In this document: positions 2,816 through 52,554 of the stretch, one piece after another
Layout of the letters: each line of letters starts with the position of its first letter
Numbering within the stretch: the stretch's first letter is position 1
NCBI RefSeq assembly: GCF_037042905.1
Contig: NC_087247.1
Location: 38,812,001 to 38,876,000 of the forward strand
Reading direction: 5' to 3'
Length of the DNA: 64,000 bases
Source: Lytechinus pictus
Taxonomy: Eukaryota
Notes under the pieces: model-generated
What the model was told of the DNA's origin: nothing
Seen by the model: the letters and a program-made list of their open reading frames with translations, nothing else
Databases searched by the model: none
Translations under genes and position numbers: made by a program

Positions 2816-4412
2816 TTCTACAGCCCCGCTATAGCCACGAAAACATGGTTATTTATGACAATGTGGATAACAAATGAAATACAATCATGCACACGAAATC
2901 AGGTGAAATTCAACAATTTGCATATATTCTTTTAAATCATGGCAAAACAATTAACAAATAATTTCTTAAGCTTGTATTATTATGGGGCATATGTTTGAAG
3001 TTGGGATGACAATGAAATAATTGCATATACAAAGGAAATAGTGAGTGCGTGACATCATTGACACCCTAATGTTCACACTGACCAGAATGTACTTTATGTA
3101 ATGACTGCATCATGAGAATAGAGGTAACTTTTGTAATACAAACACTTTATTATCATACAACCGATTTTGATGACATATTCGGTGCTTTGCTTATCTGATG
3201 TTTTTCTAATTGAAGAAATAACATGTTGTTGAGTGGGATTGGCCTTTGGGCATTTAAGATTTAAATTTGGGACTCGATTGAGCACAAAACATTATACCGT
3301 TTACAAGATCTCTCCCGCTGCATGAAATCACAAAGCTTTGATAGATTCTCTAAATGAATTCAGCACTGCACCCAACTTCCAACATCATCACTATATAACA
3401 CCCTTGTATTTTGTAAATATTTTTGATAGCATTATGAGCGTTTCTGTACACAACTATAGATGTCTTACATTTGCAAACAAAACTATTTAACATTTTCTAT
3501 TGAATTGCTTATGAATATTATATTGAAGTGCGTGCGTATACTTCCATCTTAGCTACTCTTCTATTTATTACTTACTTGCCATTTCCCGATCCCTTTTTAG
3601 TGCGATTGGAGACACAATAAACACACTACTTATTGTAGTCCACCATGACCATGCAACTCATAGTTCCATAATGATCACCATCGTACATATTGAATTGACT
3701 TCAACTCATTTATATTTTCACTTTCAATATGAACGATATTGACTTGGCGTCTGAAAAGATTACGTCTTGTTAGTAAAGAAGTATTCTTTCTCCAGGACAT
3801 TTCATATTTCTAAAAGACCAGTTTAAAGTCAATATCCCGCAACCATCTTGAAGAACGCGAGCTCAAATCCTAGTCTACTGGAGTCTTTCCAAAAATACAT
3901 CACTCTGATAATAAAGTCTTATAATATTTGCACAATAATATGACAAATCATTTCATGATATCCGCTACACATATCAAACATTTGCAAAAATAAAATATTT
4001 TCAAATAAAAAACGATAATTCTGATTGGTCCCGGCCTGCTTAGTTTTTGAGCAAAGCGCATGCAACAATTACCTTCATTGGGAATTACCATTTTGCGATT
4101 AATTACAAATCTTTGTGCTAGGGAAGCCAAGGTCCCACTCCCAATGTTATGGAACAGGTATGAAAGATAGAGGAAACGATCACAAAAAAGATATGGGCAG
4201 TGAATACGCTACGTGATCTAAAACTTTCATTGTTATCATGGTTATACTTGTTTATTGAATTGTCTCAATCATTTTTTTTATTTACTCAGCAAATAAATTC
4301 ATCAGTTGATATCCCCTTCTCTTCCTCTTGAAGCAAAATGAGGATATTGAACCTTGATTATGTTGGTTGTATCTTATCATTAAAAAACATCCGACAGTGT
4401 CATTGCTAACGC

Positions 4413-4677
4413 TTAAAGGAGACCAAAGCCCAAGACCTTCATGTTCTGGAACTCGTATAAGCCAAATCTGGAACATTCCACACCCAAGCCAGATTCCTTG
4501 ATGCCTCCGAATGGGGCCCATTCATTGAAGAAGAAGGTATCGTTGATACCGACCTGACCCACCTCCATCTCCTCAGCGACACGCCAGATTTGAGTTAGGT
4601 CATTGGAGTAAAAGTATCCCGCCAAACCCATTCGAGTGTTATTGGCGATGGTCACTGCTTCTTCTTCAGTCTTGAAC
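4413..4677 (-). CDS. ALDH5A1: Paralogue B exon 9 (FKTEEEA...KVLGFGLL*)
   Basis: 265 nt to the TAA stop. Confidence 0.9.
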
Positions 4678-7600
4678 CTGAGTACAAAGAGGGAACGAGA
4701 GAGAGGGTGAGATAAAGAGAGATGGGGGCAGGTGAGACAATAGAGAGGGGGAAATCGACAGAAAGATGGAAAGTGTGAGAGACATTTGAACATATACAAA
4801 TCAATAATAAAAGTATCATTCCGACTCCTCTTTAACGCTGCTGGTAGAAAACGTTATCTTGCAAGTTGACTTACTCTTTTTTTGTGCAAAATACTGACAA
4901 GTTATATATGTATAACTATAGCCTAACACCTGCTTAGACTGTAAATGTCAACATCGAAATCATACATTACAGCTCGTGACGGACAAATTCAGGGCGAAAT
5001 ACTATAGAAAGATGAAAAGCAATCGTGTTTTGGAAGAGGGTGTTGTGCCAATCTTACATCCAATGTCCACCCCATCAAAAAGTTGATTTGAATAAAAAGA
5101 GAAAAATCCAACAAGCAATACACTGTAAACTTCATCAAAATCGGATGTAAAATAAAAAAGTTAGGACATTTTAAAGTTTCGCTTGATTTCACAAAACAGT
5201 TATATGCATATCCTGGTCCGTATGCAAATGAGGAGGCTGATGACGTTATCCCCTCACTATTTCTTTTGTATTCTATTACATGAAATATGAAATATTTTAA
5301 TTTTCTCCTCATTGTCAAGTGAAACAACGATTGTTTCCTCCATGAACATGTGGAACTAGCATTGCTTAAAACTATATGATTCAGTCAAGTTGGTCCCTAT
5401 TGTCAAATCTGTAAAAAATGAAATATTGTATAATTCAAACAATAAAAAACAAAAGAAATAGTGAGTGATGGACATCATTGACTGTCTCATTTGCATGCCA
5501 CTGAGTTGTGCATATCACTGTTTTGTGAAAAATAAGTGAAACTTTAAAATGTCATAACTTTCTTATTTTACATCCTATTTTGATGAAATTTTCAGCGTTA
5601 TGCGAGTTTGATTTTTCTCCATTTATTAATATCAACATTTTTCTGGGGTGGACTTGACCTTTAAACATCATCGTGAAGCATATTCATGATATTCGTCTCT
5701 TTTCCATGTTACGTACTTGATTACTGAAGCCAATGGACCAAATGTTTCTTCTGAAAATGGAAGGGCAGTCGGAGGCACATCGCATATGACAGTGGGTTCA
5801 AAGAAGTTCCCTCCGAGTTTTGACCGGCATCCTCCAGTGAGGAGACGTGCGCCCTTTTTCACCGCATCCTGCACGTGCCTTTCTACCTAAATGTAAATAT
5901 GATCACAAAATCATTGTCGACAACATCGATTTTAAATTATGATATTCATGTACATGTAACTGATAGCCAAATTTCTTACAGCATAGAATAAAAGACATTT
6001 TCATATATTAAATTTTTAATCTGACCTATAAAAAGAAAATTAAACTACATTACAAAGTTATCGCTGCTGTGCTCATCTGGCTTAAAAGACCTATCCCCTC
6101 CTCTTCGCCGCCCCGTTTCTAAATACCCAACCCTGGAACCCTTTGTGCGTTACACCGACTTCAAGATTTATCTATAGGAAATTCAGCCACTGTCACAATT
6201 TTCAATTTTCTATTTGGAGAGCTAAAAGTACGGGATGTAATCTAATACCAAGATGATACATTCAATTGAACCTGTTATGGATTCAACAAATTTGTGACGT
6301 TATACAGACATTCACTAATTTACTTTAATTATATCGAGAAAAATAAATGTTCTTTTGAGCTATTAAAGAAATATCCTTAATATCATGACATCTAACGCAT
6401 CGGCGACGTCAAAAATAATTATTCATTTCAGGAATTTGTTTGTGAACTGTTAAATGAGACAACGCTCTTGCACATAGGATAAACAACTTTTGAATAATTT
6501 CTCCTAGCTTGATCCTTCGATATTATGTTTAACTTGGTTTCGGGGAGTTCAGTTTTTATTTGTGAATAACATGTAATTTGATTTTTGTTCACCTTCTCTA
6601 GACCTCGCTGGTTGATGAGAGGTCCCATTGTAGTCTTTGGATCAGTTCCATCTCCTACCACCAGACTCGATACATACTCCTTCAACTTCTCACAGAATTT
6701 ATCATAGATCCCTTCTTGCACCAAGATGCGATTTGCACTTACGCACACCTGTAATGATAACATTTTGATGTCACTTTCGTTGGAAGCAATTTCGCCGACA
6801 AGATTCTTATTGAATTTCATTTTAATGCTTACATTCATCATGGAATGTCTAGAACCTTTTTTTGCGACGGAAGTTACCAAATTAAAAATCTATCGTCAAA
6901 TTGGCTTCCCAGATACAACATTCATTAATACGGTTTTTAATTTTAAAAAATGCATGATGCATGCTTGCCCAGCTCTTGTGAATATGCTTTTTAATGCAGA
7001 TATTACCAATCCTGCCGGTTTATCATTTTTCATCATTGATATTATTTTATGTTCTAGTAATCTATAAGCACGTATGATTCATCATCGTACCCGCCTCTCA
7101 GGAAAGAATTTGTACCGCAGTCTACATAAAACCTTTTAAGCTTTGATACCTGACCCGAACCGTAGAATCTCAGCGCAAATGCTCCCATCACGGCAGCATC
7201 GAGATTTGCTGAATCAAAGACAATGAAGGGCGAATTGCCTCCGAGCTCCATGGACACCTTCTTCATTGTGTTCGCACTCTGACCCAACAGAATCTAAAGA
7301 AACATACGAGAACGGTTAGTATACAGAGTGGCACTAATGGCTTTCATAATTTCATAAATTCATTCAGAGTTACGAACAAGTCGAAAAGAAGTATAATTTT
7401 AGACGGATTTATTTAGGAGCTTTGGCCCCTAAATAACAAGGTCTGATATACTAGTACTACAATCGAGCCTCATCAAAAGAAATGTACCCTCTTTCACAAA
7501 AACCAAACGATTGTGGACAAAAAAAGAAGATATTTTCGCCAGTCAGGCTGCTCGTATGGTGACATGAGCTCGGTGATTTAGACAATAATATTTGTTAATA

Positions 7601-10600
7601 CTTATCTGGTTATTTAGTGTTTGTTTTTGTTTTCAAAACGAAATTATGGAATATTGTATATCAAACTATGTTATTCTTCAATGACTAAATTGTCTAGTAT
7701 GTTATTCAAGAGACTCGCGTTTCAAACTTCTTTTCTTTATATGTTCTCCTACTAAGTACTCTTACCTGCAAACGTAACACTCTTTTTGTCAATGTGACCA
7801 TCATTTTACATGGTGAAAACATGAAAACAAATAAATGAATAAACGGATAAATATTACTATACGACGGGGCAAGATGAATTTACCTTTCCCGTGGCTGTAG
7901 AGCCTGTGAAAGATATCTTGGATACCAGCAGACTCTCGCACATGACTTTACCTATAGCTGGAGCATTAGATCTGGAACAGGGTAATATGTTGAAGACACC
8001 GTCTGGGATACCTGCTTCCTTCGCCATCTGTAGATGAAATGAAGAAGTATAAAAGACGGATAAAATCCTTCATCACTAAACTCCCATGTATTTCTTTTTT
8101 ATTACGTCAAGCTGCAGGCATGTAATTCACCTCAAAGACATTGCAAGTTAGGTTCTGACACGCTTCTCCGTCAGATGCCAAATAACAAAAATATTACTAG
8201 TTATGCTCATTGTTGGTGCCTTTCGAGATGGTAGATTGATAAACATTGCATTTCCAATAAAATTGATTTGGTTTACCGTTGTAAAATCGTAAACCTCCTA
8301 TAATTACATCTATTATACACTTACATCACAGAGAGCCAGTGCAGAAAATGGAGTGTCCTCTGATGGCTTGATAACGACGGTACACCCAACAGCTAAAGCG
8401 GCACCGGCCTTCCTAGTTATCATCTCCATCGGAAAGTTCCACTAAACAGTATGTGTAATTAATAATAATTGGTATACAAAATATGAATACGATTTTGTAA
8501 ACTAGATTTCGGCGGTCATTTGGCATTTCTATGCCATTAAACCTTTAATTTCATTACACTATACACAATTTATAAATCACAACTGATTCACATTTTAATC
8601 AATGNNNNNNNNNNNNNNNNNNNNNNNNNNNNNNNNNNNNNNNNNNNNNNNNNNNNNNNNNNNNNNNNNNNNNNNNNNNNNNNNNNNNNNNNNNNNNNNN
8701 NNNNNNNNNNNNNNNNNNNNNNNNNNNNNNNNNNNNNNNNNNNNNNNNNNNNNNNNNNNCGAAATTCACAATAAAAAAAGAGCGTACATATGAACATAAT
8801 TTATAAAAGCAAGATATAAAATAACAAGTAAGAAACAAATACAAAGAAACAACAATATATGTATATACCGAGACTTTTGAGGATAGTGAAATCGGAAGGA
8901 CACCCAGTCCAGTTCTGCCACTAGACAGTACTGTTCTTCCACGGGGTCCAATGATTAAAACACAAGTATTATAAGAAAAGTCTCACACAAATTTCTTAGA
9001 ACAAAAGGGGAAAATTGGGGATATGGGGGGGGGGGGGGTCCAGCATCAATTTTTTTTTAAAACTTCATAGATCAGGAAGGAAGGCATTGAACCTATGTAA
9101 GAATACCATGAGACTACAAGGGACCTTTAGGCAGGGAGGTCATTGAACTAAGAAGCATCTCTGTACGAGAATGAACGTTTACAATAATTTGTTTTAGGTT
9201 TTTCTATGATATTAAATTTCCATGGGACCTTAGAGAATAACTACACTGGCTACTGGTATGTTGGAAAAATACTTTTTTTATTTAAGGCCTTAAAGACCAT
9301 TGTATTCAGATGATATCATCGCCTATTTGATAAGGTTTTCCAACCCAAACGAACATGTAACTCACATATAGACACGCGACTATATGGACTTATTCCTTAT
9401 ATACTTCTGCATGCTCTGTTTTAAAGTTTCTACAATGAATCGATGTATTTTGCACATGCTGATCATATACTATATCACCGTATTAAAGAATGGGAAGGAT
9501 AATGGCATTGTACGCAATTTTCATATTTTTCTGATCAATAGAGTGACGCAATCGAGCTAATAAACTTATGAGTTTGCTTATTATAGAACATATATATTCG
9601 ACACGCAAATTCCATTTTGAACTGGGATCTAACGACTTGCCAAGATATTTGGTTGATTGCACTTTTTTTATATTTCTTCAATTTACATTCAAGTTCAACC
9701 TATAGTACCAATCATTTTGCCAGAGTCAAAAAGCATACTGTCTTACTGTTTTATCACAGTTAAGACTCAATTTAGAATCGCACAACCACTTGTTTATACT
9801 TTTCAGCTCAGAATTCATTTGGGTTTCAATAGTTGTTTCATTTTTATGAGAGAAATAGACTACCGTGTCATCAGCATATAGGTTAATAGAACAATTTTTA
9901 ATATGTTTTACGATATCATCAATATGAATTAAGAACATAAGCGGACCCAGTATAGACCCTTGAGGGACACCGTAGTTTATTCACTCCCGGATTCACTCAC
10001 TCATTCATTCATTCAATCATTCATTCATCTAGGTATATAATTCATCTATTCATTTGTTTGTCCTCTATTTACAGTATGCATTTGTCGTTTGATACATTTT
10101 TTTCTAATTCAATCATTGAATTCAGTGATGGGCTAACCAGGCCCGTTCCCCCTCCCCTTTTTTGAGAGCCATAACAAATATTTTTAGTTGAAAATGTCGT
10201 GCATAGGGAAGTGAAGACCTTTTCTCTGAACAAAAATACCCCCTTTGGAAAAATCCTGCATCCGCCACTCATTAAATCCATTCAGTTTAATTTTTTTTTC
10301 ATTTCTCCAGGAGTGGTATTTAAAATATTCTCCCACCGACCCTAACAATAAATAATTAAAACATTAAAAAGCTATTTAACTGCACATTCTATCACCCCTT
10401 TTTGATTGTTGATAACAAATTGTTTCACTTACAGGAGTAATAAGTCCAGCCACGCCCACTGGCTGTCGGATAACCATGACCCTCTTGTTTTTGTCATGTG
10501 GCATCAGAACCTCGCCGGTTGTCCTCGTCGCTTCTTCCGCAAAGTATCGAAGGAATTGTGCAGCACCTGTCGCTTCAGTTGAGGCCTCAAACAATTTCTT

Positions 10601-13600
10601 TCCCTACATGAGATAATTTAAGACGTATCATCATTATTATGTATTATGTATTATTGTCATTCTATTTCTATTTCATGTTGTAATATCAATCTTGTGTTTC
10701 TTTTATTGTGTTGCAGGGCCCCTTTGTAAATCAGTTTGCTAACTGAAAGGGATACCCTGTTGAAATAAAATATGAATAAATAGATATAACCGCTTAGAGA
10801 CATGTTTTGTGACAAGCGCTATACAAATAATGTTAATTATTATTATTATAAATAAATGAATAAATAAATAAATAAATAAATAAAGGTAACCTTTTGTCTT
10901 AGCGTCGAGAGAAAAAAAAAATTTAAAATTATGTGAACCTCCAAGCCTCGGAAAAAAAATGTGTGTAACTAGTTATTCTTTAAACATAAAAATAGTCCCT
11001 CGAATTTATTTTTGTACTTAAAGATTTCAAACATTTCTAAAAACGTTGATTATTCCCTGCTTTAATTTCTTCCATTTTGTAAACCAAAAAACTTCTTTAT
11101 TTGGAAGCACAAACTTCACTTATCGTGTTTAATATGACGCTTATGACGCTTCAATCGAACAAGCCTAGCTCTTTTGGTCGAGCAATGTAAATTTAATCTT
11201 TAGGATCATTTGTACACTTACATAAACACTGATTAATATCGTTGCGGAAACGAAAGAATTCATATTAAACAAACCATAAATGAACAGAAAATTACGCAAA
11301 AAGTATTATACACACGTTTTCTGCAATGATGATGTTGGTCAAATTCTCCTTGTTTTTATCCATCAGTCCTGCGAAACGGTTCAGGATAGCAGCTCTTTCC
11401 TTGAATAGAAACAACACAATTATTCGAATTTATCAGCAGGATAATCGAGTGAAAGGAATGGAAGATTATCACATATCAGATGTATTCCCTGGAAAAACTA
11501 ATAACAAAAAGGAGTGGGGGATTGAATTAGACTCACAATTATCGATCGAACCTATACAGCTCTCACCATATTCAGGGAAAAATAATAATAGGGACAAAGT
11601 CTTAAATACACATCATGCAAATATTTTTAGTCAGCTGCTATTGCTTCAAGCACTTTTGTGCTTAAAATAGCTGACTCCTGTACTTCACTGAACTTACTAC
11701 AAGTATATCACATGCTTTATGTATAATTAAATTATCAGTTTTTGTCCGTATTATTTATCTCTTCAATTGTCACATTTAAAATATATTCTTTTATATCTTT
11801 GTTATTACGTGATCACGTTAATTTATTACGATTTATGAAAAAATGCAGAAACTCCTCCCCCCCCCAAAAAAAAAATACGGGGAGAAGATGCGTGTGTATG
11901 GATACGTGTTTGAAAAGCGTGTACGTGTGTGAGGGTGTGTGTGTGTGGGTGTGTGGTGTAGGAGGGTGTGTGTGAGAGTGTAAAATCGCACTCACAAGTC
12001 TCTACTTCGGCGATTAATGATAAATAATTCCCCTATTGTCAAATTACATGAGTGAGTGGGTGTGCGTTGGTGTTATGTGGGTGAGGGTGTAAAGGGGAGC
12101 GTTTCATGACAGGACTTGTCGGTCGTTTTATCCGACAAGTCCCGTTATATCCGACAGTTACCATAGTAACAGTACCTCTCAGCCAATCAACATCAGAGAA
12201 AGATGTCAGATCTGACAACTTGTCGGATGAAAATGTTGATGAAACACTCCCCAGGTGTGTGGTGTGTATTTGCGTCATGTACAGCATGAGTATAAGAACA
12301 TTATGGGTAAAGAAAAATAAGGGCCACGTATATTGTTTCTTTAGGTTACATTGATTCAATAAACATATATCACACAAGAATTTACGGACGTTCTTGTTTC
12401 AATGATAAGTTTTTCTTCAATTCTGGACTCTTTTCTGAAAATCAAGAATAAAATGCATTTGTTTAGGGGTTCAATTTAGAGAATACTTGCCAAGGGTATC
12501 GTTTTGTTTCCAATACTTGCTAAGGGTAGGGTTTCACACGCCGATACTTGTTAAGGGGTGCATTTTCAGAATATGGAAAATACTTGTTTAGGGTGCTTTT
12601 CGAGACCCCATGGTCGCGCATGGTATCCACTCGTCAATGNNNNNNNNNNNNNNNNNNNNNNNNNNNNNNNNNNNNNNNNNNNNNNNNNNNNNNNNNNNNN
12701 NNNNNNNNNNNNNNNNNNNNNNNNNNNNNNNNNNNNNNNNNNNNNNNNNNNNNNNNNNNNNNNNNNNNNNNNNNNNNNNNNNNNNNNNNNNNNNNNNNNN
12801 NNNNNNNNNNNNNNNNNNNNNNNNNNNNNNNNNNNNNNNNNNNNNNNNNNNNNNNNNNNNNNNNNNNNNNNNNNNNNNNNNNNNNNNNNNNNNNNNNNNN
12901 NNNNNNNNNNNNNNNNNNNNNNNNNNNNNNNNCTACTCCTAGGTTTAATCTATCAATATGACTACTATACTGCTACTTCGGTTACTTTATTACTGCTTGC
13001 AAGTCATTTCAAAATGTATTTGAATTTCTGTGTGTGTTTATACTAAAAATCAACACTCTACAAATGTTCAAATTTACTCTCTGCACTTGACGCTGCATTG
13101 CAATATTTGCTAAAGATATGCATACAATCGAATAGCTGAGTTATAGTCGTCATTCACATAATAATTCTGGCAATGACATTGCATTTAATATTTCACGAAA
13201 AGATGGTGGCTGGATGGTAGGTGTGTAACTTATTTATACCTAGTCGAATATTCAGACCTTGTTACATTTTTGCATGAAACCTACTAGAACTGGTAGGATC
13301 CATGATTTTTGTCAACATTTGCATTAATTTTTCTAAAACCTTTGACGCGGTCGTTGTAAAGCGTCGTTCCAGTGTCCATAATTCATAAGAAAACTTTAGG
13401 TCTACTAATTCACGATTCGAAATTGGTGTTCTAGAAGTCATTACTCATTGACAAAGCTTTAAACAGACCCCCCCCCCCCCCCTCGGGACAATCATTTTCG
13501 AAAATGCATTTAAGCCAAGGGAGCGAAAGAATCTAGTTTACATGAAGACAGGATTAATGGGTTTTAGCAATGAAAGCTGACAAACAAGGTTTTGGTTCAC

Positions 13601-13860
13601 ATTTTAACATGTATTAATTAATTATATGCCAGGGTTAATGACTTTTTTCTTACTTTTGCTGTTGTCTTCTTCCATGTCTTAAATGCGGCATGAGCGACCT
13701 CAATGGCACGGTCAGTGTCAGCGGCACCGCAGTCTGCAATGTTAGCTATCACTTCACCTGTTGCAGGGTTCGTCACTGCAAAGGTCTCTCCTGATTTAGC
13801 AGGTACCCATTCACCTCCAATGTAAGCCTTATCTCGGATGAGAGGATTAGCTGGCGCCAT
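4413..13860 (-). CDS. ALDH5A1: ALDH5A1-like aldehyde dehydrogenase, divergent paralogue B (no mitochondrial presequence), 9 coding exons, 485 aa
   Basis: Exons 13860-13654, 11399-11316, 10603-10433, 8441-8325, 8027-7884, 7293-7150, 6748-6593, 5886-5717, 4677-4413 (207/84/171/117/144/144/156/170/265 nt). All introns are GT-AG and the join is in frame with no stops. Motifs: PWNFP, KPSEDTP, SFTGST, catalytic Glu in MELGGN, catalytic Cys in [19 protein letters not shown]. Confidence 0.9.
5064..5660. mobile_element. Kolobok-like foldback MITE, left end eroded
   Basis: Same family. Further partial copies at ~42440-42786, ~34615-34740, ~3030-3240 and ~63200-63610. Confidence 0.82.
5717..5886 (-). 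CDS. ALDH5A1: Paralogue B exon 8 (VERHVQDA...[12 protein letters not shown])
   Basis: 170 nt, phase-2 donor. Confidence 0.9.
6593..6748 (-). CDS. ALDH5A1: Paralogue B exon 7 (VCVSANR...[11 protein letters not shown])
   Basis: 156 nt, carries the catalytic Cys. Confidence 0.9.
7150..7293 (-). CDS. ALDH5A1: Paralogue B exon 6 (ILLGQS...MELGGN...LRFYGSGQ)
   Basis: 144 nt, carries the catalytic Glu. Confidence 0.9.
7884..8027 (-). CDS. ALDH5A1: Paralogue B exon 5 ([13 protein letters not shown]...[10 protein letters not shown])
   Basis: 144 nt, AG/GT boundaries. Confidence 0.9.
8325..8441 (-). CDS. ALDH5A1: Paralogue B exon 4 ([11 protein letters not shown]...[15 protein letters not shown])
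   Basis: 117 nt, AG/GT boundaries; missed by the ORF track. Confidence 0.9.
8605..8759. other. Assembly gap (155 N) in paralogue B intron 3
   Basis: N run; the exon chain is complete without it. Confidence 0.99.
9260..9975 (-). mobile_element. Degraded CR1/L2-type non-LTR retrotransposon RT fragment
   Basis: [10 protein letters not shown] and LYADDT RT motifs followed by frameshifted decay; boundaries approximate. Confidence 0.8.
10433..10603 (-). CDS. ALDH5A1: Paralogue B exon 3 (GKKLFEA...[11 protein letters not shown])
   Basis: 171 nt, AG/GT boundaries. Confidence 0.9.
11316..11399 (-). CDS. ALDH5A1: Paralogue B exon 2 (ERAAILNRF...IAEN)
   Basis: 84 nt, AG/GT boundaries, homologous to 38469-38552. 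Confidence 0.88.
12094..12252. mobile_element. Harbinger-like MITE (GGGGAGCGTTTCAT...ATGAAACACTCCCC)
   Basis: TIRs; inverted second copy at 36953-37110; related element at ~59854-60034. Confidence 0.7.
12640..12932. other. Assembly gap (293 N) in paralogue B intron 1
   Basis: N run starting just before the expected poly-C TIR of a MITE. Confidence 0.99.
13654..13860 (-). CDS. ALDH5A1: Paralogue B coding exon 1 ([16 protein letters not shown]...TTAK)
   Basis: ATG in AAAATGG context; donor GTAAGA; acceptor 14 nt upstream of the ATG. Confidence 0.88.
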
Positions 13861-13894
13861 TTTGGGATGATGATCTAAGACCAGATATAAAGGG

Positions 13895-14005
13895 AGAAAG
13901 AAGAAGTTGAGGTAGAAAAAGAAGAAGAAGGAGAAAGAGGAGGAGGAGGAAGAGGAAGAGGAAGAGGAAGAAGAAGAAGAAGAAGGAAGAAGAGGAAAGA
14001 AAGGG
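13895..14005. repeat. (GAA/GAG)n purine microsatellite
   Basis: Direct reading; a similar tract lies at 44205-44430. Confidence 0.9.
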
Positions 14006-24536: not shown

Positions 24537-24801
24537 TTAGATTCCACCGAAGCACACATATTTGATTTCTTGGTATTCATCCATACCATACTTTGACCCC
24601 TCCCTACCCATTCCAGATTCCTTGATACCACCAAACGCTGATATATCAGTAGAGATGAGGCCTTCGTTGACGCCGACCATACCGACTTCGAGCTTCTCAG
24701 CGACACGCCAGATTTGACCAATGTTGTTGGAGTAGAAGTAGCCGGCGAGTCCGACGCGAGTGCTGTTGGCGATTGCAAGGACTTCAGCTTCTGTTTTGAA
24801 C
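24537..24801 (-). CDS. ALDH5A1: Copy A exon 9 (FKTEAEV...YVCFGGI*)
   Basis: 265 nt to the TAA stop. Confidence 0.92.
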
Positions 24802-27800
24802 CTGTACAAAAGGAATAAAATTAATTGTCACGTTACCGTAACTCAATTATTGAGTCATTGCAGTCTGCATGAAGTACTCTATAAAAAAATAAATGCATTT
24901 CAGCTGTACAAATATTGAATATTTGTAATCTTGTAATGATGTCATCTGGATCGCCCATATGCCCCATAAGTTTTCTCCCACATCTGATTTAAATTACCTT
25001 CAATGTTCACATTGTAACGACCAGTTCAAAATCGACTTCCCTCGGATTCAGCGTGAAAAAAAAAAACATTTGATATCCACTTAAATAAAACTTTGCCAAG
25101 TAATTTCCCGAGACTCTCATAAATCTAATGTGATATAATATATACAAAATATCATAGCACATATATAAAATGTTGGTGCCTAAAATAAAATCATGTTGAA
25201 TATACGTAAAACGGGTATCTCATTGGAGAAACCAAATGAATAGCCAGACTTGAAATAAAAGTGCTGAAACAATGATCACACGAAATATCTATAAGCCATA
25301 CGTGATTAACTTAAGAAAAGTTTTATAACAACAAATGATGAAACTCACTTAATAATTGGAGCTAGAGGTCCAAATGTTTCTTCTCTGCAAACTAGGGCAT
25401 CGGTAGGTACATCACGGATCAATGTAGGTTCATAGAAACTACCACCTAGAGCATGCCGTTTGCCTCCTACTAGAACCTTCCCTCCATGGGAGATTGCGTC
25501 TTGTACATGTTCCTCCACCTTTGGAAGACAAAGTTTATGTATTAGAGTACCAAATGTGAAGATGAATACATGTCCAACTCGTTAGCATCATAATGGAAAA
25601 TTAGGATGTAAATTCTAGAACAAATCATATTAAACACTTAGGAAATCCACTCCAGTATCATATTATTATGTTTTTGTTTTATTTCATGACAAAGAACAAG
25701 AAAAGATTATACTTTTCAATATATCTCCCTCTCGCTTCTAAAAAGTTCCAGTTTTACATCCTGACAAAGCTTTCAGTGTGCACTTTTAAGCGAGTATACC
25801 CAGGCGCGGATCCAGGGGCATGTGCCACCCCCCCCCCCCCCCGCCTTTTGAGAAGCAAAATTAAAAATTTGTAATGTAAAAATGCCATGGAAAGTGAAGA
25901 TCTTTTTTTTTTGCTTGTCAAATTTTTTCGGGTACGAAATACCCTTAATTAGTGGTTGAAAACTTTTTTTTTTTTTTTTGCTTGTCAAATATACCGTATA
26001 CCGTCAAATATACCGCCCCTGAGTATACCGGTGCTCCTTTTACTTTGGAAAAGATGCAATTTCTTTGAACAAAAATATTAAGAAAAAACATAAAAACAGA
26101 TGACAAGAAAAAGAGGGTTTTCGCTGTAAAAAGAGGGAAATTGACCCCAAAATACTATAGCAAGCTATAAAAACGACTTTCATAAATTTGGCACAAGTCT
26201 TCGTGGGCTAAAAGGGAGCATATGCCCCGTGTGCCCCCTCTGGATCTGCTTCCGCATGCATCCCATCCTACGTTAGTTTCAATAATTAAATGTAAAATGA
26301 ATTACTTCTACAGTGTTCTGGGAGAGATGGCCAATGTTTTAACACTCAAATGAGTAGGTCTACTGCATTCTAATTTGTCAAAATATGATTTCTGCATCCT
26401 TTCTTGGTAGATATAAATGATAATCCGAAATATGTACCCCAACATCTCAAAACTGTGTTTCTAAAAACATCACATATCATAGATTGCATGCTGTCTGTAC
26501 TCTTACTATCAAAGTCACTCACCTTTTCCATTCCTTTCACATTGATAAGAGGACCCTGTGTTGTCTTGGAATCCATGCCATCGCCGACTACTAATTTCTC
26601 AACTTCAGCCGTCATTTTCTGACAAAACTCTTCATACACCTCCTCTTGTACAAAAATTATGTTGGCACACACACAGGTCTAAAAGTGGTGGAAAATAAAA
26701 ATTACTTTAGAACTATAAAAGCCCTGCAAATTTAGGTTAATAAGATGTATGGGGGGAAAGACATGTAAAAAATGTATTATGTTTTGTTCTTCTACTTCTG
26801 ATTACATAAATCTTAAATATCTAATAAATATCAGCTAAAAAACGAACCGGGCCCTGGTTATGCTTATGAAATAAGGCCTATTTCAGTGGGGACTTTGAAC
26901 GGATGTGAAGCACATTACAAGTGATTCATACATACCATTTGACATAGCGTCATGTCATGTATCTAATATTGTTAAAGATTTTCCCCGCGCCAACAAATAG
27001 GCATATAGTCTTATACTGTTGACACTTAAATTAACAACAGTTTGTATGACTCTTAATAAATATCACTCAAATATACGAAAATTCGTCTCTACCTATCATG
27101 AATATTTAGCTAGAAACATGAGAAAATTGACAAGATACGAATGAAGGATTGACGATACTTTCAGTTATATTCACTTTTAAAGATAAGTTTATGTGAATTT
27201 CACGAATTGCATTAGATTAATCAGATAATGTGAAATATGACTTATAAGGCTCTAAAAAGCTCTGTCACATACTGCCATCTATAACGTAGAATTCTTTTCA
27301 GGGGGGGGGGGGGTAACGGAGATTGCTGCGAGTGTGAGGTGAATCCGGCCATCCCCGTTCACGGGGACAAAATCGGATTTGAAAATTTGGATTGATGACC
27401 GTTATCGAGCTTTCGGTTTTGGTAGGCTACCGTGACCTTTACTCCGACGAAAATTGCTTCAATGGCAAATAGGCACGTTAAGCCAAACATAACACCTTAC
27501 TTCCAAAATTAAATAAACCCTAATCCTTGTCTTTACATTATTCTGAATAATAAACTCTATTAGAATCCTAACTCTAACCCTATGTCCTCTGATATATTAA
27601 AGGTCAAGTCCACCCCAGCAAAATGTTGATTTAAATAAATAGAGAAAATGAAACTAGCATAACACCGAAAATTTCAAAATCGGATGTAAAATAAGAAAGT
27701 TATGGCATTTTAAAGTATCGCTTATTTTTCACAAAACAGTGATATGCACAACTCACTGACATGCAAATGAGTCAGTCGATGATGTCCATCACTCACTATT

Positions 27801-30800
27801 TCTTTTGTTTTTTATTATTTGAATTATACAATATTTCATTTTTTACAGATTTGACAATAGGGACCGACTTGGCTGAACCATATAGTATTAAACAATGCTG
27901 ATTCCATATATATAGGGAGGAATTAATTACTGTTTCACTTGACAATGAGGAGAAAATTAGAATATTTCATATAATAAAATACAAAAGAAATAGTGAGTGG
28001 ATGACGTCATCAGTCTCCTCATTTGCATACCGACCAGGATGTGCATATCACTGTTTTGTAAAAATTCAGTGAAACTTTAAAATGTCATAACTTTCTTATT
28101 TTACATCCGATTTTGATGAAATTTTAAGTGATATGCTTGTTGGATTTTTCTCTTTTTATTTAAATAATTTTTTTGTTGGGGTGGACTTGTCCTTTAAGAC
28201 CGGAGCATATGTCTTGTGATCTTTGCAAGAGGCTCATTAAATTTATTAGTTCTGAGCTCTATATGTGGGGAAGCAGATAACTTTTTGAGATCTCGGCCGT
28301 CCACCGCGTGATCGTGATGAATAACGATTCCTGCGTTACCCGCAAAGTCATCTATCACTTTCTCTAATAATTGATTGAATAATTACTAAATAAAGCTCCA
28401 GATATACTTGTTTTAAGTACTCTTGTTTACAAATATACATGAAAAAATGGAATCAAATCAAATTCAATTTATCATATTTTATATTTATTCAGTTCTTTGT
28501 CTTTCAACTTTTCGTTTGTTAATGCCTTTTCGGTGAAATTCTTCGGCAACACTATATAACCAGGATAAAACTCTTTGAGATTGATCGTTTTCTTTTAAAT
28601 CCCGTGTATATATGCGATTACAGAATATCATATAATTTAGGAACAGCGCGTAATGGCGTACTGTCTTTTTTTTTCTACAGACGTGTAATACAATAAGCCA
28701 GTTCACGGTTAGCTCATGATCAACTTTTCTCTAATGACCTTTGTGATATTTCATTAGGATAAGCACTATCATTATCAAATGTAGATGTTGCGTAAGCTTT
28801 ACCGGTAGAGTATTCAAATTCTAAGAACAAATAATAATAATAATATAGGTTTATTTACCCAGGGAAGCCACTTCAGTTTCGAAAACTGTTCTACCAGCGG
28901 GCCCTGCTATTATTATTACCCCGGCTTTAGCTGAGCTGCCTCGGCGCTCAAGCATTCAAGGAATTTCTTCCTACCGGGTACCCATTCACCTCACCTGGGT
29001 TGAGTGCAGCACAATGTGGATGAGTTTCTTGCTGAAAGAAACAAAAGGCATTGTATAGACCAGGTGACTAGAATAGTACATCAGGGATAAAGTTTGGAAA
29101 TCTGTTTTATTGTCTGCCTCTGGAACATTTGACTATTGTTAAGGCTAATGTCAAATACCAGTGATTATGAAGGCTCTGTTTATTTCTCTTCAGCTTGGAT
29201 GTGATAAAATGAATATTTTGAAAGGAATTTATGAATAATCATCAAATCACAAATTTTATGTCAGTGAATTTGAAAGCCACCTTCATGGTTTATCTCAAAT
29301 GACCTTTTTCTGCTCGTGCAGTTTACAACCGTGAACAGGCTTATTGGATATGATTAGGCACGAGATGCACGAGGTGGTACAGAAGAAGGTGACTGGTGAC
29401 AGCGTAACGGTGCGAAACAGAATGATGTGAAACGTCTGGGGTGGATTTCACTATATCCAGCCTTTTAAGGATTGAAATATGGCCCCTTCAAATTGAACAT
29501 GTGGCCGTCTTGAAGTGGCCAAAAACATTATTGGACGAAACAGACGGTACCGTTAGATACGGTAAGTCAGCACAACAGTGAACTTGAACAATTAAATTGG
29601 GTTTATTCAGACCTGTCCGGATCCGCGGTATTTAGAGACCATGGCGCCAGCAACAGCGGCGTCTACATCAGCTGAATTGAATACAATAAATGGTGCATTA
29701 CCACCGAGTTCCATGGAAACACGTTTGACTGTATCAGCTGATTGTTTGAGAAGGATCTGAAAAACAAAAACACGCAAATATACAATCACAAACCATGAAA
29801 GAGGATGGTTACTGTAAATACAAATTTTCTTACTGGCAAGCAAGGTATCCCATAGTAAATGAAAAGTCCCATTTCACAAGAAATTAGCTCATGGTAGGCA
29901 ATAAATTGTGACCTAAAGGTGAATTCATTTACTTTTTCTAGATAATACGAATACTGTGTAATTACAAAACCAATCAAGCTTTTGTCAATACTCTTTCTTC
30001 TGTTCATTTCCTCCTGTTTTTTTTGGTCATTTCAAGATTTTTACTTAACATCACTTCAAAAACAATAGCGGCGGTGACCATTAAGTCCCCCTGTAGTACC
30101 GTCTGTCTCGGCCCCACGTTTCATTGGTTCTAAAAGGAAAAGGCAAAAAGTGCCATGAACAGACCAGTAACAAGCCGACCATGACTAAAATAAAAGTTGT
30201 GTTTTTCTAAATCGGATAAATCAGACATAAAATGGTAACTCTTCGAGTCAACTTTAAATCTTAAATTTTCTTAGAAAATGTTATATGCTGTACCAAGTAA
30301 GAAAAAAAAAGAATTGCCAGTTCTTGTTAGAATGATTTCACTTCAGTTGGCGTTATATTGGTTAAGCCCCAGTCACATATAGATCCCGGACCACCCCGGA
30401 CCATCCCGGATCTGATCCGGGGTGGTCCGGGGAGAGATCCGTGTTGGCGCCTTGGGCATCCTTGGAGGTCCGGGGTGGTCCGTGTTGGTCCTTGAACGTC
30501 CGGGAGGCCAACACGGCAGTTTTTGACTGTCAAAAACATCCGGCGTCATCCGTGGACTGCCGGGTTGGCAAAGCCATCCGGGATGGTCCGTGTAGGTCCG
30601 TGTGGCTGCCGTGTAGGTCCGTGTAGCTGCCGTGTAGGTCCGTGTGGCTGCCTGGAGTATCCTTGGCAGTCCGTGTTCTTTTTTCCCATCAAATCTTTAC
30701 AACGCTATTTACTTTATGAACTTTTCAGGAGTTGTTAAACAGTTGAAACAAACTTGCTTAATTTATTTATTATTAAATGGATGATTTAACGATTCAGGAT

Positions 30801-33800
30801 ATTTTCTTACGCTTCTTACGCCCAACCTAATATCTGTCAACTTAGTGCATGTATCAATATTTTATTTTTTTATTTTTAATATTTACCCCAACTTTGTCTG
30901 TTATTACTATTTCACATTTCATTTTCTTAAAATAAATGTTATGTACCTGTTACATCAAAATTGTACATTAAGTTTGATACCACTGCCCTGTATCGACAGT
31001 TATGCGTCATGACCTGGGCCTATCTTAATTTTTATTATGTTTTCTATTGACTTTTTTAAAAACAACATAATATAATGTTGCGACAAGGATGAGAAAAAAT
31101 AAATAAATATCAGCTCATTATATTATGAGCAGATTCTCATTTGCCGTGCTGGTCAATATAGCTGCCGTGTTGGTCCTTGAGCTGACGTGTTGGTCCGTGT
31201 AGCTGACGTGTTGGTCCGTGTAGCTGACGTGTTGATCCGTGTAGCTGACGTGTTGGTCCGTGTTGGTGACGTGTAGGTCCGTGTTGCTGACGTGTTGGTC
31301 CGTATTGGTCCTTGTAGCTGACGGGTTGGTCCGTGTTGCTGACGTGTTGATCCGTGTAGCTGACGTGTTGATCCGTGTTGCTGACGTGTAGGTCTGTATT
31401 GCTGACGTGTAGGTCCGTGTTGACGACATGCTCTGCCGGCATGGTCCGTGTAGATCCGTGTGAAGACCTCCCCGGACCTCCCCGGATCATGCCGGCGTTG
31501 CCGTGTTGATCCGTGAGGATCCGTGTCTATATGTGACTGGGGCTTTAGCTGCGTTGTATAGACTTCCGTTTGTTCTTGAGCAAGCGTTATACAAAAGAGA
31601 GAGAGAGAGAGAAAAAAAATATACAAACCTTTCCTGTTTGTGTTGAACCAGTGAAAGATATCTTAGCCACTAAAGGACTTTCACACATGATTTTCCCTAC
31701 ATCTGCAGCATGAGAGCGAGAACACGGTACAACGTTGAACACACCAGCCGGTACTCCCGCTTGGTTGGCCAACTATAGATCATTAAAAAAATACACTGTT
31801 GACATGTATGTAATTTTACATAGGACGTGAGTAATTTCAAGAAATATATCTAATCAAAATCTATATAAGGTTATAACCTTGATATATTGTCCGTTTTGTT
31901 CACTTAGAGCATGATTCATAAAAAGTATATCTAAGTAAGATCATTGGTATACCTTATCTGCAAACTCTGTGTAGGTAGTTTGATATATTTATTAGGCTTT
32001 TTTAACATATAGAAACACATCCAATAATGAACAGCCAGATCAGTAAGTTAAAAAATTAATCAGTATTTACAGGATGATTGCAATTTTCAATGAATAAAAC
32101 ACAATTGTATTTTACATTTAGGACATGTACCAAGACATGTTGTATAAATCAGGTATACCTCACACAATGCAAGGGCCGACAGAGGAGTATCTTCTGCTGG
32201 TTTGACTACCACTGTGCATCCAGCTGCAATCGCTGCAGCAGCTTTTCGTGTGATCATTGCAGAGGGAAAATTCCACTGAAATGAGAAATGATTTCAATAA
32301 AATACAATCATAAGCTAACATACTTCAAGACTATGACTACAAGAACGAGGTTATTGGTCAAGATTAACATGCATCGCATAACTTATATGGACAAAAGAAA
32401 TTTAATGGGGTGCTGAGGTCACACCATTAAAGGGTTTTACGGATTTTAATGAGAGTGACTTCTATCGGTAAATCATGGAATAAAATCAGTTCGATTATTA
32501 ATCAGCTTTGTGCATTATGGTCCGTGACAAATATATCTTTTAAGTTAAGAGGCTTGACCAAATTATTCGTATCTCAAGTTGTTGGTTTAAATGGTTCATA
32601 GCAAAATTATGAAATGGAAAGCTATTGGAATCATAGTATTTTCAAACATGTTGAATTACACTTTGGGGGAATGTACGTCCATGACACATTCATAGTGGCG
32701 ATTGAGAAGCATATTGATTATTATTCGATCGCGAAAATACTCGACGAGGTCAATTCATTTGGATAAAAATAGCAACAACAAAAAACTAAATCACATCTCA
32801 ATTTATATCGTGTTCAGCCGTGATACTAAAGATTAATTGATGTGCATATGAATAGGAAACCATGACAATCGTACGCATTTATTAAACTTATAAATATAAA
32901 GCATGTCATATCGTTTGGTCACTTAACATTTACAGGCCTCACAATTTTGTCTTCTTTTCTTAAATAATCCATCCGTGACAAGCTGACCGCATTCAGTAGT
33001 CAAAATTTTGTTACAAATGATATGTGTCTGTATCAAAATTAATGTTTCGTATTTAAAATTATTGCTTGAGTCGGCTTTAATTGCAAAATAAATGAATAAA
33101 CTCAACGATGTAAACAAAAATTAAGGAATCAATGAACATTTGAAAGAAAATGATCCTATATAAAATCACAGATAAAAAAACTATGTCTAGAGTTATTTTC
33201 GATTTCATGCAAGTCATTTTAACCCTGTCTAGGCCGGGGTATTTTGGGAGTTCATATGGCCGGGGGGGGGGGGGGGGCTCCCAGCCCCCGCCCCCTTGAG
33301 ATCTCGGCCGTTTGCCGCGCGATCGCGCCGAAAATTGGCACGCAGGTTGTCTGGGACATAATCAAGAAAATGGTATAGTAATTTATTTCATGCAAATTGC
33401 TATTAAGTGATTATGCCAATTTATGCATATTTAGTATGCGAAATCATACTTATCCCTCTAACTCCCTAAATAAAGCTCAAAATGTTCGAATTTTTGGCAT
33501 AAAAACTCTTTGTGGTGTTCTTAGCAAGTGTACATGAAAAAAATTGCGATATCAGATCAATTTCTTATGTATTATATAATTTTTTGCAATTTCTTATATA
33601 TTTCTATGTTTTTTTGACCTTTTTTTCTTTGTTTTTTAATGAAATTTGTTGGGGACTCTTCTGAGAACATAAACAGCATAAAATGAATACATGTAAACCA
33701 GTAAAACTAAAAATAATCATAAATTTATGATTTTTGGTTGAAAACACAATTTGAATTGACTTTGTACACGAAATCACGTTTTTGAACAATTTTTTGTCTA

Positions 33801-52494: not shown

Positions 52495-52554
52495 GCTTCC
52501 TTCTCTGTCACGTTCCCGTAGCACCTCAGGATGGTTTCGTGAAAATTGAATTGA

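What the first reader, a model, noticed from the sequence alone, without database searches (positions are those of the whole stretch)
4413..13860. Intact SSADH duplicate with a rebuilt substrate pocket: candidate new aldehyde dehydrogenase
Seen: copy B keeps the catalytic Asn/Glu/Cys and the NAD-binding motifs but differs from copy A at substrate positions. SKYRGSGQ becomes LRFYGSGQ (Arg six residues before the catalytic Cys to Tyr), [12 protein letters not shown] becomes [12 protein letters not shown] (Ser to Phe plus extra aromatics), GEVGY becomes [13 protein letters not shown] becomes FPMEMITR (new Glu), and GREGS becomes GVECS. Known: human SSADH binds the succinic semialdehyde carboxylate with R213, R334 and S498. 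Copy A keeps all three and copy B keeps only R213. In spinach betaine aldehyde dehydrogenase (ALDH10) the Cys-6 position is the aromatic-box Trp285. Inference: B is neofunctionalised toward cationic (amino/betaine/sulfonium) or hydrophobic aldehydes, such as dietary algal aldehydes, rather than the GABA shunt.
Basis: partly seen in the sequence, partly recalled or inferred. Interest (0 to 1): 0.85.

Follow-up and report, generated by a model that had tools for sequence, protein, structure and literature searches.

The report
Rebuilt-pocket SSADH paralogue in sea urchins
Sea urchins carry, next to their ordinary mitochondrial succinic-semialdehyde dehydrogenase gene, an old, expressed and well-conserved second copy that has lost its mitochondrial address and most of the residues that hold the normal substrate, so it is very probably an aldehyde dehydrogenase with a new, still unknown substrate.

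Summary
The window comes from Lytechinus pictus. It holds two tandem 9-exon ALDH5 genes on the minus strand. A (24537-41468, 548 aa) has a presequence. B (4413-13860, 485 aa) has none. Both N gaps lie in B introns, and my B model is identical to the NCBI protein P0269.

B keeps the catalytic Asn, Glu and Cys and the Lys214-Glu515 dyad. It has replaced 3 of the 4 residues that bind the succinic semialdehyde (SSA) carboxylate: Y159G, R334Y and S498F. It also carries A209E, T339V and C342S, the last of which removes the redox switch.

- Arg334 is invariant in 217 of 217 other ALDH5 sequences.
- The same changes occur in L. variegatus, S. purpuratus and Diadema setosum.
- B is spliced into RNA.
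- B is under purifying selection (omega 0.09-0.15, against 0.05-0.06 for A).
- B scores below NCBIfam's SSADH cutoff, while A-type proteins pass.

The cytosolic lineage is older than the sea urchin-sea cucumber split. Sea cucumber orthologues keep the ancestral pocket, so the rebuild happened on the sea urchin stem.

Published Ala mutants of the equivalent moss residues cut SSA efficiency to 0.6-8% and shift preference to aliphatic aldehydes. B is therefore most likely a cytosolic dehydrogenase for non-carboxylated aldehydes. The actual substrate is untested. I class it as a new variant of a known kind, currently annotated as mitochondrial SSADH.

The parts
13654..13860 (-). B exon 1 (aa 1-69). 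The ATG is at 13860-13858 and there is no presequence.
12640..12932 (.). Assembly gap inside B intron 1
11316..11399 (-). B exon 2 (aa 70-97)
10433..10603 (-). B exon 3 (aa 98-154). It holds Gly110 (human Y159), Arg116/Tyr117 (E165/W166), Thr123 and Thr126.
8605..8759 (.). Assembly gap inside B intron 3
8325..8441 (-). B exon 4 (aa 155-193). It holds the catalytic Asn156, the new Glu160 (human A209), and the retained Arg164/Lys165 (R213/K214).
7884..8027 (-). B exon 5 (aa 194-241), part of the Rossmann fold, including GSTATGK
7150..7293 (-). B exon 6 (aa 242-289). It holds the general base Glu257 and Tyr285 (human R334).
6593..6748 (-). B exon 7 (aa 290-341). It holds Val290 (T339), the catalytic Cys291 (C340) and Ser293 (C342).
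5717..5886 (-). B exon 8 (aa 342-398). Its last codon is split with exon 9.
4413..4677 (-). B exon 9 (aa 398-485 plus the TAA stop). It holds the loop [12 protein letters not shown] with Phe448 (human S498), Val464 (R514) and Glu465 (E515).
2986..4412 (-). B 3'UTR. The extent is inferred from the 2940-nt RNA contig, which runs 714 nt beyond position 3700.
   Evidence: arithmetic on record 1 of run X1
41073..41468 (-). A exon 1 (aa 1-132), including a basic N-terminal extension of about 65-74 aa ([13 protein letters not shown]...)
38469..38552 (-). A exon 2
37872..38042 (-). A exon 3 (GEVGY, Tyr kept)
32159..32275 (-). A exon 4 (FPSAMITRK)
31629..31772 (-). A exon 5
29613..29756 (-). A exon 6 (SKYRGSGQ, Arg334 kept)
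26523..26678 (-). A exon 7 (TCVCAN, both Cys kept)
25349..25518 (-). A exon 8
24537..24801 (-). A exon 9 plus stop ([17 protein letters not shown])

Best explanation
Copy B is a functional, probably cytosolic, NAD-type aldehyde dehydrogenase that descends from SSADH (ALDH5) but no longer has an SSADH substrate site.

Shown here:
- The gene is intact, spliced into RNA, conserved at 485 aa in four sea urchin species, and under purifying selection.
- It keeps the ALDH5 fold and every catalytic residue: Asn156, Glu257, Cys291, Lys165 and Glu465.
- In the upper substrate channel, three of the four carboxylate-binding residues are replaced: Tyr to Gly110, Arg to Tyr285, Ser to Phe448.
- A Glu (160) now sits one helical turn before the one surviving Arg (164).
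- Thr339 has become Val.
- The mitochondrial presequence is absent.

Inferred:
- The positively charged pocket that holds the SSA carboxylate has become neutral and aromatic. Glu160 may pair with Arg164.
- B therefore turns over SSA poorly and instead oxidises aldehydes without an omega-carboxylate. Uncharged aliphatic or aromatic aldehydes are most likely, and cationic ones are possible.
- It probably works in the cytosol, without thiol-disulfide redox gating.

History: a tandem duplication and loss of the presequence took place before sea urchins and sea cucumbers split. The pocket was rebuilt later, on the sea urchin stem, and then held fixed.
For: - Gene model and identity.
- RNA: a spliced 2940-nt contig in L. 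pictus and spliced contigs in the sister species.
- Selection, pairwise: dN/dS is 0.147 for L. pictus vs L. variegatus (11 nonsynonymous, 22 synonymous changes; binomial p = 1.5e-7 against neutrality) and 0.108 against S. purpuratus.
- Selection, maximum likelihood: omega is 0.094 for the B clade and 0.049 for the A clade.
- Derived residues are identical in four species, and Asn205, Arg213, Lys214, Glu306, Cys340 and Glu515 (human numbering) are retained.
- At 150 sites conserved in 211 other ALDH5 proteins, each B sequence departs at 19-23. The median for other sequences is 1 and the maximum is 15.
- The B-specific shifts are enriched in the published channel residues (p = 6.5e-4).
- TIGR01780 (SSADH) cutoff is 646.35 bits. 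B scores 633.2 and 627.8. The A-type protein scores 707.6 and the sea cucumber orthologue 704.6.
- AlphaFold model: pLDDT 91.2. Residues 160 and 164 lie on helix 158-172. TM-score is 0.96-0.97 to ALDH5 structures.
- B and the sea cucumber 488-aa proteins have only 12-15 residues before the first conserved motif, against 73-91 in sea urchin A-type proteins. One of the sea cucumber proteins has an upstream in-frame stop.
- Literature on the human site: R213, R334 and S498 bind the SSA carboxylate, and the C340-C342 disulfide is a redox switch (PMC11681614). The SSA pocket is positively charged (PMC2823781).
- Literature on moss ALDH5F1: R287A, Y115A, S450A and R169A keep 0.6, 1.8, 8.0 and 3.9% of the kcat/Km for SSA. 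Removing either Arg raises relative activity on pentanal and hexanal but not on aminoaldehydes (bioRxiv 10.64898/2026.01.13.699213).
Against: - There is no enzymology for B or any orthologue.
- Arg164 and Lys/Arg283 remain and might still hold a carboxylate in another geometry.
- The remodelled loop (residues 441-460) is the least confident part of the model (pLDDT 70-80).
- That loop differs again in a fifth B-type fragment from a Tara metagenome (P0151), so part of the change may reflect relaxed constraint on the loop.
- Cytosolic location is inferred only from the missing presequence.
- One raw RNA run (X19, about 6% of it read) had no reads on B exons, so expression is not ubiquitous.
- The Glu160-Arg164 pairing is inferred from helix spacing, not measured.
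Confidence: 0.6

Rival explanations
1. B is still a succinic- or other omega-carboxy-semialdehyde dehydrogenase, simply relocated to the cytosol. It would bind the carboxylate through the retained Arg164, Lys/Arg283 and backbone groups.
For: Arg213 and Lys214 (human numbering) are kept in all B proteins. B sits inside the ALDH5 clade. It scores only 13-19 bits below the SSADH cutoff. The sea cucumber orthologues of the same cytosolic lineage keep the full binding set.
Against: Three of the four ligands are lost together. A single Ala change at each equivalent moss position already leaves only 0.6-8% of the efficiency. The channel gains an acidic residue, and R514 is also lost. Arg334 is otherwise invariant in 217/217 sequences. 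Lys332 is present in canonical enzymes too, so it is not a new compensating residue.
Confidence: 0.15
2. B has reversed the charge preference of its pocket and oxidises cationic aldehydes (4-aminobutanal, trimethylaminobutanal, betaine aldehyde). It would then be a functional analogue of ALDH9/ALDH10.
For: Two Arg are lost (R334, R514). A Glu is gained at 209. Aromatic residues are added at 334 and 496-498, plus Trp451 in Lytechinus. The Cys-6 position is aromatic in ALDH10-type enzymes (Phe291/Trp289 in barley ALDH10).
Against: Removing either Arg in moss ALDH5F1 did not raise aminoaldehyde oxidation. Arg164 stays in the channel. B scores far below the BADH and ABALDH model cutoffs (417 against 668.6, and 409 against 615). 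The Trp is not conserved outside Lytechinus.
Confidence: 0.15
3. B is a relaxed or decaying duplicate, or has taken a non-catalytic role as a binding or structural protein, as some ALDH-derived crystallins have.
For: B evolves about twice as fast as A (omega 0.094 against 0.049; Fisher p = 0.003). The substrate loop varies between B lineages. No reads were found in one RNA run.
Against: The open reading frame and the nine exon sizes are identical in four species as distant as Diadema. Omega is about 0.1. All catalytic and NAD-site residues are invariant. Spliced transcripts are present in two species.
Confidence: 0.05

Closest known systems
Human ALDH5A1 (mitochondrial SSADH; PDB 2W8N-2W8R)
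   Same: 54% identity. The predicted fold matches at TM 0.96. Same catalytic Asn/Glu/Cys, the Lys214-Glu515 dyad and Arg213. The Glu in the KP(A/S)EDTP cofactor motif is the same.
   Different: B has no presequence. It carries Y159G, R334Y and S498F (carboxylate ligands), A209E, T339V, C342S (no redox switch) and R514V. Strand residues 529 and 531 are also changed.
Copy A in the same window, and its sea urchin orthologues (S. purpuratus XP_030827901, XP_030853387)
   Same: Tandem neighbour on the same strand, with the same 9 exons and intron phases. The tandem order is conserved in S. purpuratus. A and B are 60% identical.
   Different: A keeps the presequence, the full ligand set and CxC, passes the SSADH model cutoff through its orthologue P0347, and is about twice as constrained.
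Sea cucumber 488-aa ALDH5 (Holothuria leucospilota KAJ8046947.1 cluster; P0389, P0390)
   Same: Sister group of the B clade (support 97/80). It also lacks a presequence.
   Different: It keeps Arg334, Ser498, Cys342 and Arg514. Changes at 159, 165, 209 and 495 are only mild (Y to F, A to G). It passes the SSADH cutoff.
Moss ALDH5F1 (PDB 8OF1) and its site-directed variants
   Same: Best structural match (TM 0.97). Its channel residues map one-to-one onto the positions changed in B.
   Different: The moss enzyme is a strict SSA enzyme. Its Ala variants partly mimic B and lose SSA efficiency. B combines three such changes with bulky aromatic replacements.
ALDH1/ALDH2 and ALDH9/ALDH10 (hydrophobic-aldehyde and aminoaldehyde dehydrogenases)
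   Same: B has an aromatic residue at Cys-6 and in the 455-460-type loop, and a small residue at the Met124-type position. These equivalences come from my own knowledge of ALDH2 and ALDH1A1 numbering and were not tested here.
   Different: Only 35-38% identity. B is phylogenetically an ALDH5, keeps Arg213 where those families have Trp, and is well below their family model cutoffs.

Membership tests
ALDH superfamily (Pfam PF00171) | Aldedh domain, ALDH fold, and catalytic Cys, general-base Glu and oxyanion Asn | tested here: met
   PF00171 is precomputed for P0269. pLDDT is 91.2 and TM-score is 0.94-0.97 to many ALDH structures. Asn156, Glu257 and Cys291 are invariant.
ALDH5 / SSADH (NCBIfam TIGR01780) | Whole-protein score at or above the curated cutoff of 646.35 bits | tested here: not met
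   B of L. pictus scores 633.2 and B of Diadema scores 627.8. A-type P0347 scores 707.6 and sea cucumber P0389 scores 704.6.
ALDH5 / SSADH | Phylogenetic placement inside the ALDH5 clade | tested here: met
   IQ-TREE on 46 sequences places B inside the echinoderm ALDH5 group, with a clade support of 100/100.
ALDH5 / SSADH | Carboxylate-binding set Tyr159, Arg213, Arg334 and Ser498 (human numbering) | tested here: not met
   Only Arg213 is kept. The others are Gly, Tyr and Phe in all four B orthologues.
ALDH5 / SSADH | Cys340-x-Cys342 redox-switch pair in the catalytic loop | tested here: not met
   B has C-V-S (C-I-S in Diadema). Cys342 is present in 206/217 other sequences.
ALDH5 / SSADH | Lys214-Glu515 second-shell dyad | tested here: met
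   Lys165 and Glu465 are kept in all B proteins.
Animal mitochondrial SSADH (ALDH5A1-type) | N-terminal mitochondrial presequence | tested here: not met
   There are 12 residues before the first conserved motif, against 73-91 in sea urchin A-type proteins and 63 in a mammal. There is no in-frame ATG upstream in the genome before the stop at 14011-14013. The RNA contig leaves about 55 nt of 5'UTR.
ALDH5 / SSADH | Efficient NAD(P)+-dependent oxidation of succinic semialdehyde | not testable with these tools
   This needs enzyme assays.
ALDH9/ALDH10 aminoaldehyde / betaine aldehyde dehydrogenases | Family model score at or above the cutoff | tested here: not met
   TIGR01804 scores 417.3 against 668.6. 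NF010000 scores 408.8 against 615. NF009725 scores 403.5 against 593.

The most novel reading that the evidence does not exclude
Sea urchins and sea cucumbers are reported to have lost ALDH1A, and the enzyme that makes retinoic acid in sea urchins is unknown (PMC8834484). The cytosolic ALDH5 lineage arose in that same ancestor. In sea urchins its channel was rebuilt to a neutral, aromatic, ALDH1/2-like form. The most novel reading is that B is the replacement cytosolic dehydrogenase for hydrophobic aldehydes in sea urchins, possibly including retinal. That would be a case of one ALDH family taking over the job of a lost one.
Probability: 0.05. Interest if true: 0.85.

Novelty: new variant of a known kind. 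Interest (0 to 1): 0.55.

Why it matters
Genome annotation calls this protein 'succinate-semialdehyde dehydrogenase, mitochondrial(-like)' in four sea urchin species. The evidence says it is neither mitochondrial nor likely to be an SSADH, so metabolic reconstructions of the GABA shunt in sea urchins that count it would be wrong.

It is a clean natural experiment in enzyme evolution, with three separable steps:
- duplication and loss of the targeting sequence in the sea urchin/sea cucumber ancestor;
- a burst of change focused on the substrate channel on the sea urchin stem, at residues that are invariant everywhere else in the family;
- long-term purifying selection on the new state afterwards.

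Sea cucumbers keep the intermediate state, so each step can be tested by swapping residues between orthologues. If the substrate proves to be retinal or another signalling or dietary aldehyde, the gene would gain developmental or ecological importance. As it stands, it is a solid candidate for a new ALDH5 subfamily rather than a new kind of system.

Tried and rejected
- **Representative search.** The search with B exon 9 returned nothing B-like. The top hit, P0001, was an artefact with two tandem copies, and at 50% clustering B falls into ordinary SSADH clusters.
- **Exon-9 search of the 90% clusters.** It gave only one B-like fragment, P0151, from a Tara metagenome.
- **Alignments of single exons to a backbone (A1, A2).** MAFFT misplaced the exons. 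A3 was only partly correct but sufficed as a profile to retrieve the full-length orthologues. A3 was not used for any residue-level claim.
- **Biopython cal_dn_ds failed.** I replaced it with my own NG86 code and the IQ-TREE GY94 model.
- **Literature searches.** Searches for sea urchin SSADH/ALDH5 and for a link to diatom aldehydes found nothing on this gene.
- **Raw RNA run X19.** It gave no reads on B exons, only on an intronic repeat. I treat this as 'not expressed in that sample', not as silence.
- **Simple one-duplication tree.** A tree with sea urchin A plus sea cucumber A as one clade is weakly rejected (AU p = 0.0245). The group was named after seeing the tree and long branches are involved, so I do not build on the exact order of events.
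- **Recent Lytechinus-specific duplicate.** Rejected, because orthologues exist in Diadema and the sister group is in sea cucumbers.
- **Pseudogene or neutral evolution.** Rejected, because omega is about 0.1.
- **Peroxisomal targeting.** Rejected, because the C-termini (...GFGLL, ...GFGGI) are not PTS1-like (my reading of the sequence).
- **Branch-site test on the B stem.** Not run, because synonymous sites are saturated between A and B and no suitable program was available.
- **Pocket geometry.** It could not be measured, because the structure tool returns no coordinates.


Full report
**What is in the window**

The region holds two aldehyde dehydrogenase genes on the minus strand, seen first as runs of ORF fragments and confirmed by tblastn.
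- Copy B runs from its ATG at 13860 to its TAA at 4415-4413. It has nine exons, all introns are GT-AG, the frame is unbroken, and it encodes 485 aa.
- Copy A lies 10.7 kb upstream in the same orientation (41468 to 24537). It has nine exons at the same positions and phases, and it encodes 548 aa.
- A and B are 60% identical.
- A search of the whole 812-Mb genome with B's last exon finds only these two copies.

**Assembly gaps**

The only N runs in the window are 8605-8759 and 12640-12932. They fall in B's intron 3 and intron 1. Four observations show that nothing coding is hidden in them.
- The assembled protein aligns without a break to human SSADH.
- It is 100% identical to the annotated Lytechinus pictus protein P0269.
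- The L. variegatus, S. purpuratus and Diadema setosum genes have the same nine exon lengths: 207, 84, 171, 117, 144, 144, 156, 170 and 265.
- A 2940-nt RNA-derived contig joins exons 4 to 9 at exactly the predicted junctions. Its remaining 517 nt equal exons 1-3 plus about 55 nt.

The window is therefore from L. pictus. The coded 'organism B' is L. variegatus. I infer this because the five amino-acid differences seen in its contigs (F264L, S317G, T324S, I375L, P380T) are the same ones that separate P0271 from P0269.

**The observation**

I checked human numbering in two ways: through the PDB chain 2w8p (index +48) and through 535-aa mammalian sequences.

B keeps the following residues:
- Asn205, Glu306 and Cys340, which form the catalytic machinery;
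- Arg213;
- the Lys214-Glu515 dyad.

B has these changes:
- Y159G, R334Y and S498F, three of the four carboxylate ligands;
- A209E, T339V, C342S and R514V;
- I157A, E165R/K, W166Y, R172T, Y175T/V/S, S208M/L, M329F, S331L, E494D, G495T and L496F.

All of these states are shared by the four B orthologues. Only the Trp in NEWAPF and the Cys in GVECS are specific to Lytechinus.

**Is this more than chance?**

- In 217 other full-length ALDH5 proteins from animals and bacteria, Arg334 is invariant. Tyr159 is present in 209, Ala209 in 209, Thr339 in 214, Trp166 in 214 and Ser498 in 208.
- At 150 sites that are at least 95% conserved in 211 ALDH5 sequences from outside the sea urchin A, B and sea cucumber 488-aa groups, each B sequence departs 19-23 times. 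The median for those 211 sequences is 1 and the maximum is 15. Sea urchin A sequences depart 3-6 times.
- The moss ALDH5F1 structure paper lists ten non-catalytic channel residues. Their residue types match the human positions one-to-one. Five of them are among the 14 B-specific fixed shifts, against 0.9 expected (p = 6.5e-4).

The divergence is therefore aimed at the substrate channel.

**Is B alive?**

- Spliced transcripts exist in L. pictus and L. variegatus.
- One raw RNA run had no reads on B exons, so expression is not ubiquitous.
- In one study, the best-holding samples differ between A and B. This is only a hint of different expression.
- Pairwise dN/dS for B is 0.147 between the two Lytechinus species, which rejects neutrality (p = 1.5e-7). 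It is 0.10-0.11 against S. purpuratus at dS of about 0.9.
- The A pair at similar depth gives 0.06.
- ML estimates are 0.094 for the B clade and 0.049 for the A clade.
- The 3'UTR is about three times more divergent than the coding exons.

B is therefore constrained, though about half as tightly as A.

**History**

A 46-sequence ML tree places the B clade on a long stem (0.54, against 0.17 for sea urchin A). Its sister group is a pair of 488-aa proteins, and together they are sister to sea urchin A (supports 97/80 and 99/92).

One of the 488-aa proteins clusters at 90% or more with a Holothuria leucospilota protein, so they are sea cucumber orthologues. Like B they lack a presequence, and one has an in-frame stop just upstream of its ATG. 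They keep Arg334, Ser498, Cys342 and Arg514, show only mild changes at 159, 165, 209 and 495, and pass the SSADH model cutoff.

The sequence of events was therefore:
1. Duplication and loss of mitochondrial targeting before the sea urchin/sea cucumber split.
2. The pocket rebuild on the sea urchin stem, before Diadema diverged.

The A-then-B tandem order is conserved in S. purpuratus. The exact placement of the sea cucumber A-type is unsettled (AU p = 0.0245).

A fifth B-type fragment from a Tara metagenome has the R514V change but a different substrate loop, one residue longer. That loop has therefore kept changing within the clade.

**Mechanism**

Published work gives the following.
- In human SSADH the SSA carboxylate is held by Arg213, Arg334 and Ser498. 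Cys340 and Cys342 form a regulatory disulfide (PMC11681614).
- The pocket is positively charged, and the catalytic loop spans 334-342 (PMC2823781).
- In moss ALDH5F1, Tyr115 (human 159) is a fourth ligand.
- The single Ala variants R287A, Y115A, S450A and R169A retain 0.6, 1.8, 8.0 and 3.9% of the efficiency on SSA.
- Loss of either Arg raises relative activity on pentanal and hexanal, but not on aminoaldehydes (bioRxiv 10.64898/2026.01.13.699213).

B carries changes at three of these four positions at once. It also adds a Glu one helical turn before the remaining Arg. Both residues lie on helix 158-172 of a confident model (pLDDT 91.2).

From this I infer that B is a competent dehydrogenase that has given up SSA. 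Uncharged aliphatic or aromatic aldehydes are the most likely substrates. It probably works in the cytosol and lacks the redox switch. Cationic substrates remain possible.

The resemblance of Gly110 and Tyr285 to ALDH1A1-type channel residues comes from my memory of those structures and was not tested here.

**Family membership**

B is an ALDH (PF00171) and descends from ALDH5. It fails four SSADH features that could be tested here: the TIGR01780 cutoff (633.2 against 646.35), the ligand set, the CxC pair and the presequence. It is not an ALDH9/10 by score. The fold matches ALDH5 structures at TM 0.96-0.97.

**Novelty**

The gene is annotated, but as mitochondrial SSADH. The paper library held nothing on it. 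It is best described as a new variant (subfamily) of a known enzyme family.

One piece of context is worth noting. ALDH1A is reported lost in the same sea urchin/sea cucumber ancestor, and the retinoic-acid-forming enzyme of sea urchins is unknown (PMC8834484). A link to B is speculative, and I give it about 5%.

**Earlier scan notes**

The earlier notes returned did not concern this locus.

Noticed in passing
window 47374-52524 (-): A single uninterrupted 1716-aa ORF with gag-like, protease, reverse transcriptase, RNase H and integrase-like motifs by eye. It looks like an apparently intact LTR retrotransposon of BEL/Pao type. It lies between gene A and the TFIIIC6 gene. I observed it only and did not analyse it.
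   Followed up: no
window 58123-59418 (+): Three exons of a TFIIIC subunit 6 homologue (72-86% identity to the product on L006). In RNA contigs L006 (S. purpuratus-like) and L008 (an unidentified sea urchin) this gene lies head-to-head within about 35-550 nt of gene A. In L. pictus it lies about 17 kb away, with the retrotransposon in between.
   Followed up: partly
window 4988-5792 (B intron 8): A highly repeated element. In the RNA-derived assemblies its summed contig depth is 10^4-10^5, and it recruits thousands of raw RNA reads on both strands. Many reads have loose ends at 5065 and 5664. It is probably an abundant transcribed SINE/MITE-like repeat. A related ORF pattern recurs in A's intron near 38700-38880.
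   Followed up: no
window 31137-31626 (A intron 5, -): A tandem array of short imperfect repeats that reads as ...[14 protein letters not shown]... in one frame. It is a minisatellite directly downstream of A exon 5.
   Followed up: no
window 13861-14010: A long CTT/CTC-rich polypyrimidine microsatellite lies immediately upstream of B's start codon, where A has its presequence. The presequence-coding part seems to have been replaced by low-complexity sequence.
   Followed up: partly
tree (P0437, P0454, P0392, P0422): The crinoid Anneissia and the hemichordate Ptychodera each have two ALDH5 genes. These fall in two different deep clades. One clade holds only echinoderm and hemichordate sequences and includes all sea urchin, sea cucumber, sea star and brittle star copies. 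The other clade groups with chordates and protostomes. The sea urchin 'A' gene may therefore not be the strict orthologue of vertebrate ALDH5A1.
   Followed up: no
L002 and L003 (S. purpuratus): The S. purpuratus assembly carries the A-B pair twice, on a 62-Mb chromosome and on a 3-Mb scaffold. The B proteins are identical but intron 1 differs in length (1.3 kb against 5.4 kb). The scaffold is probably an unmerged haplotype.
   Followed up: no
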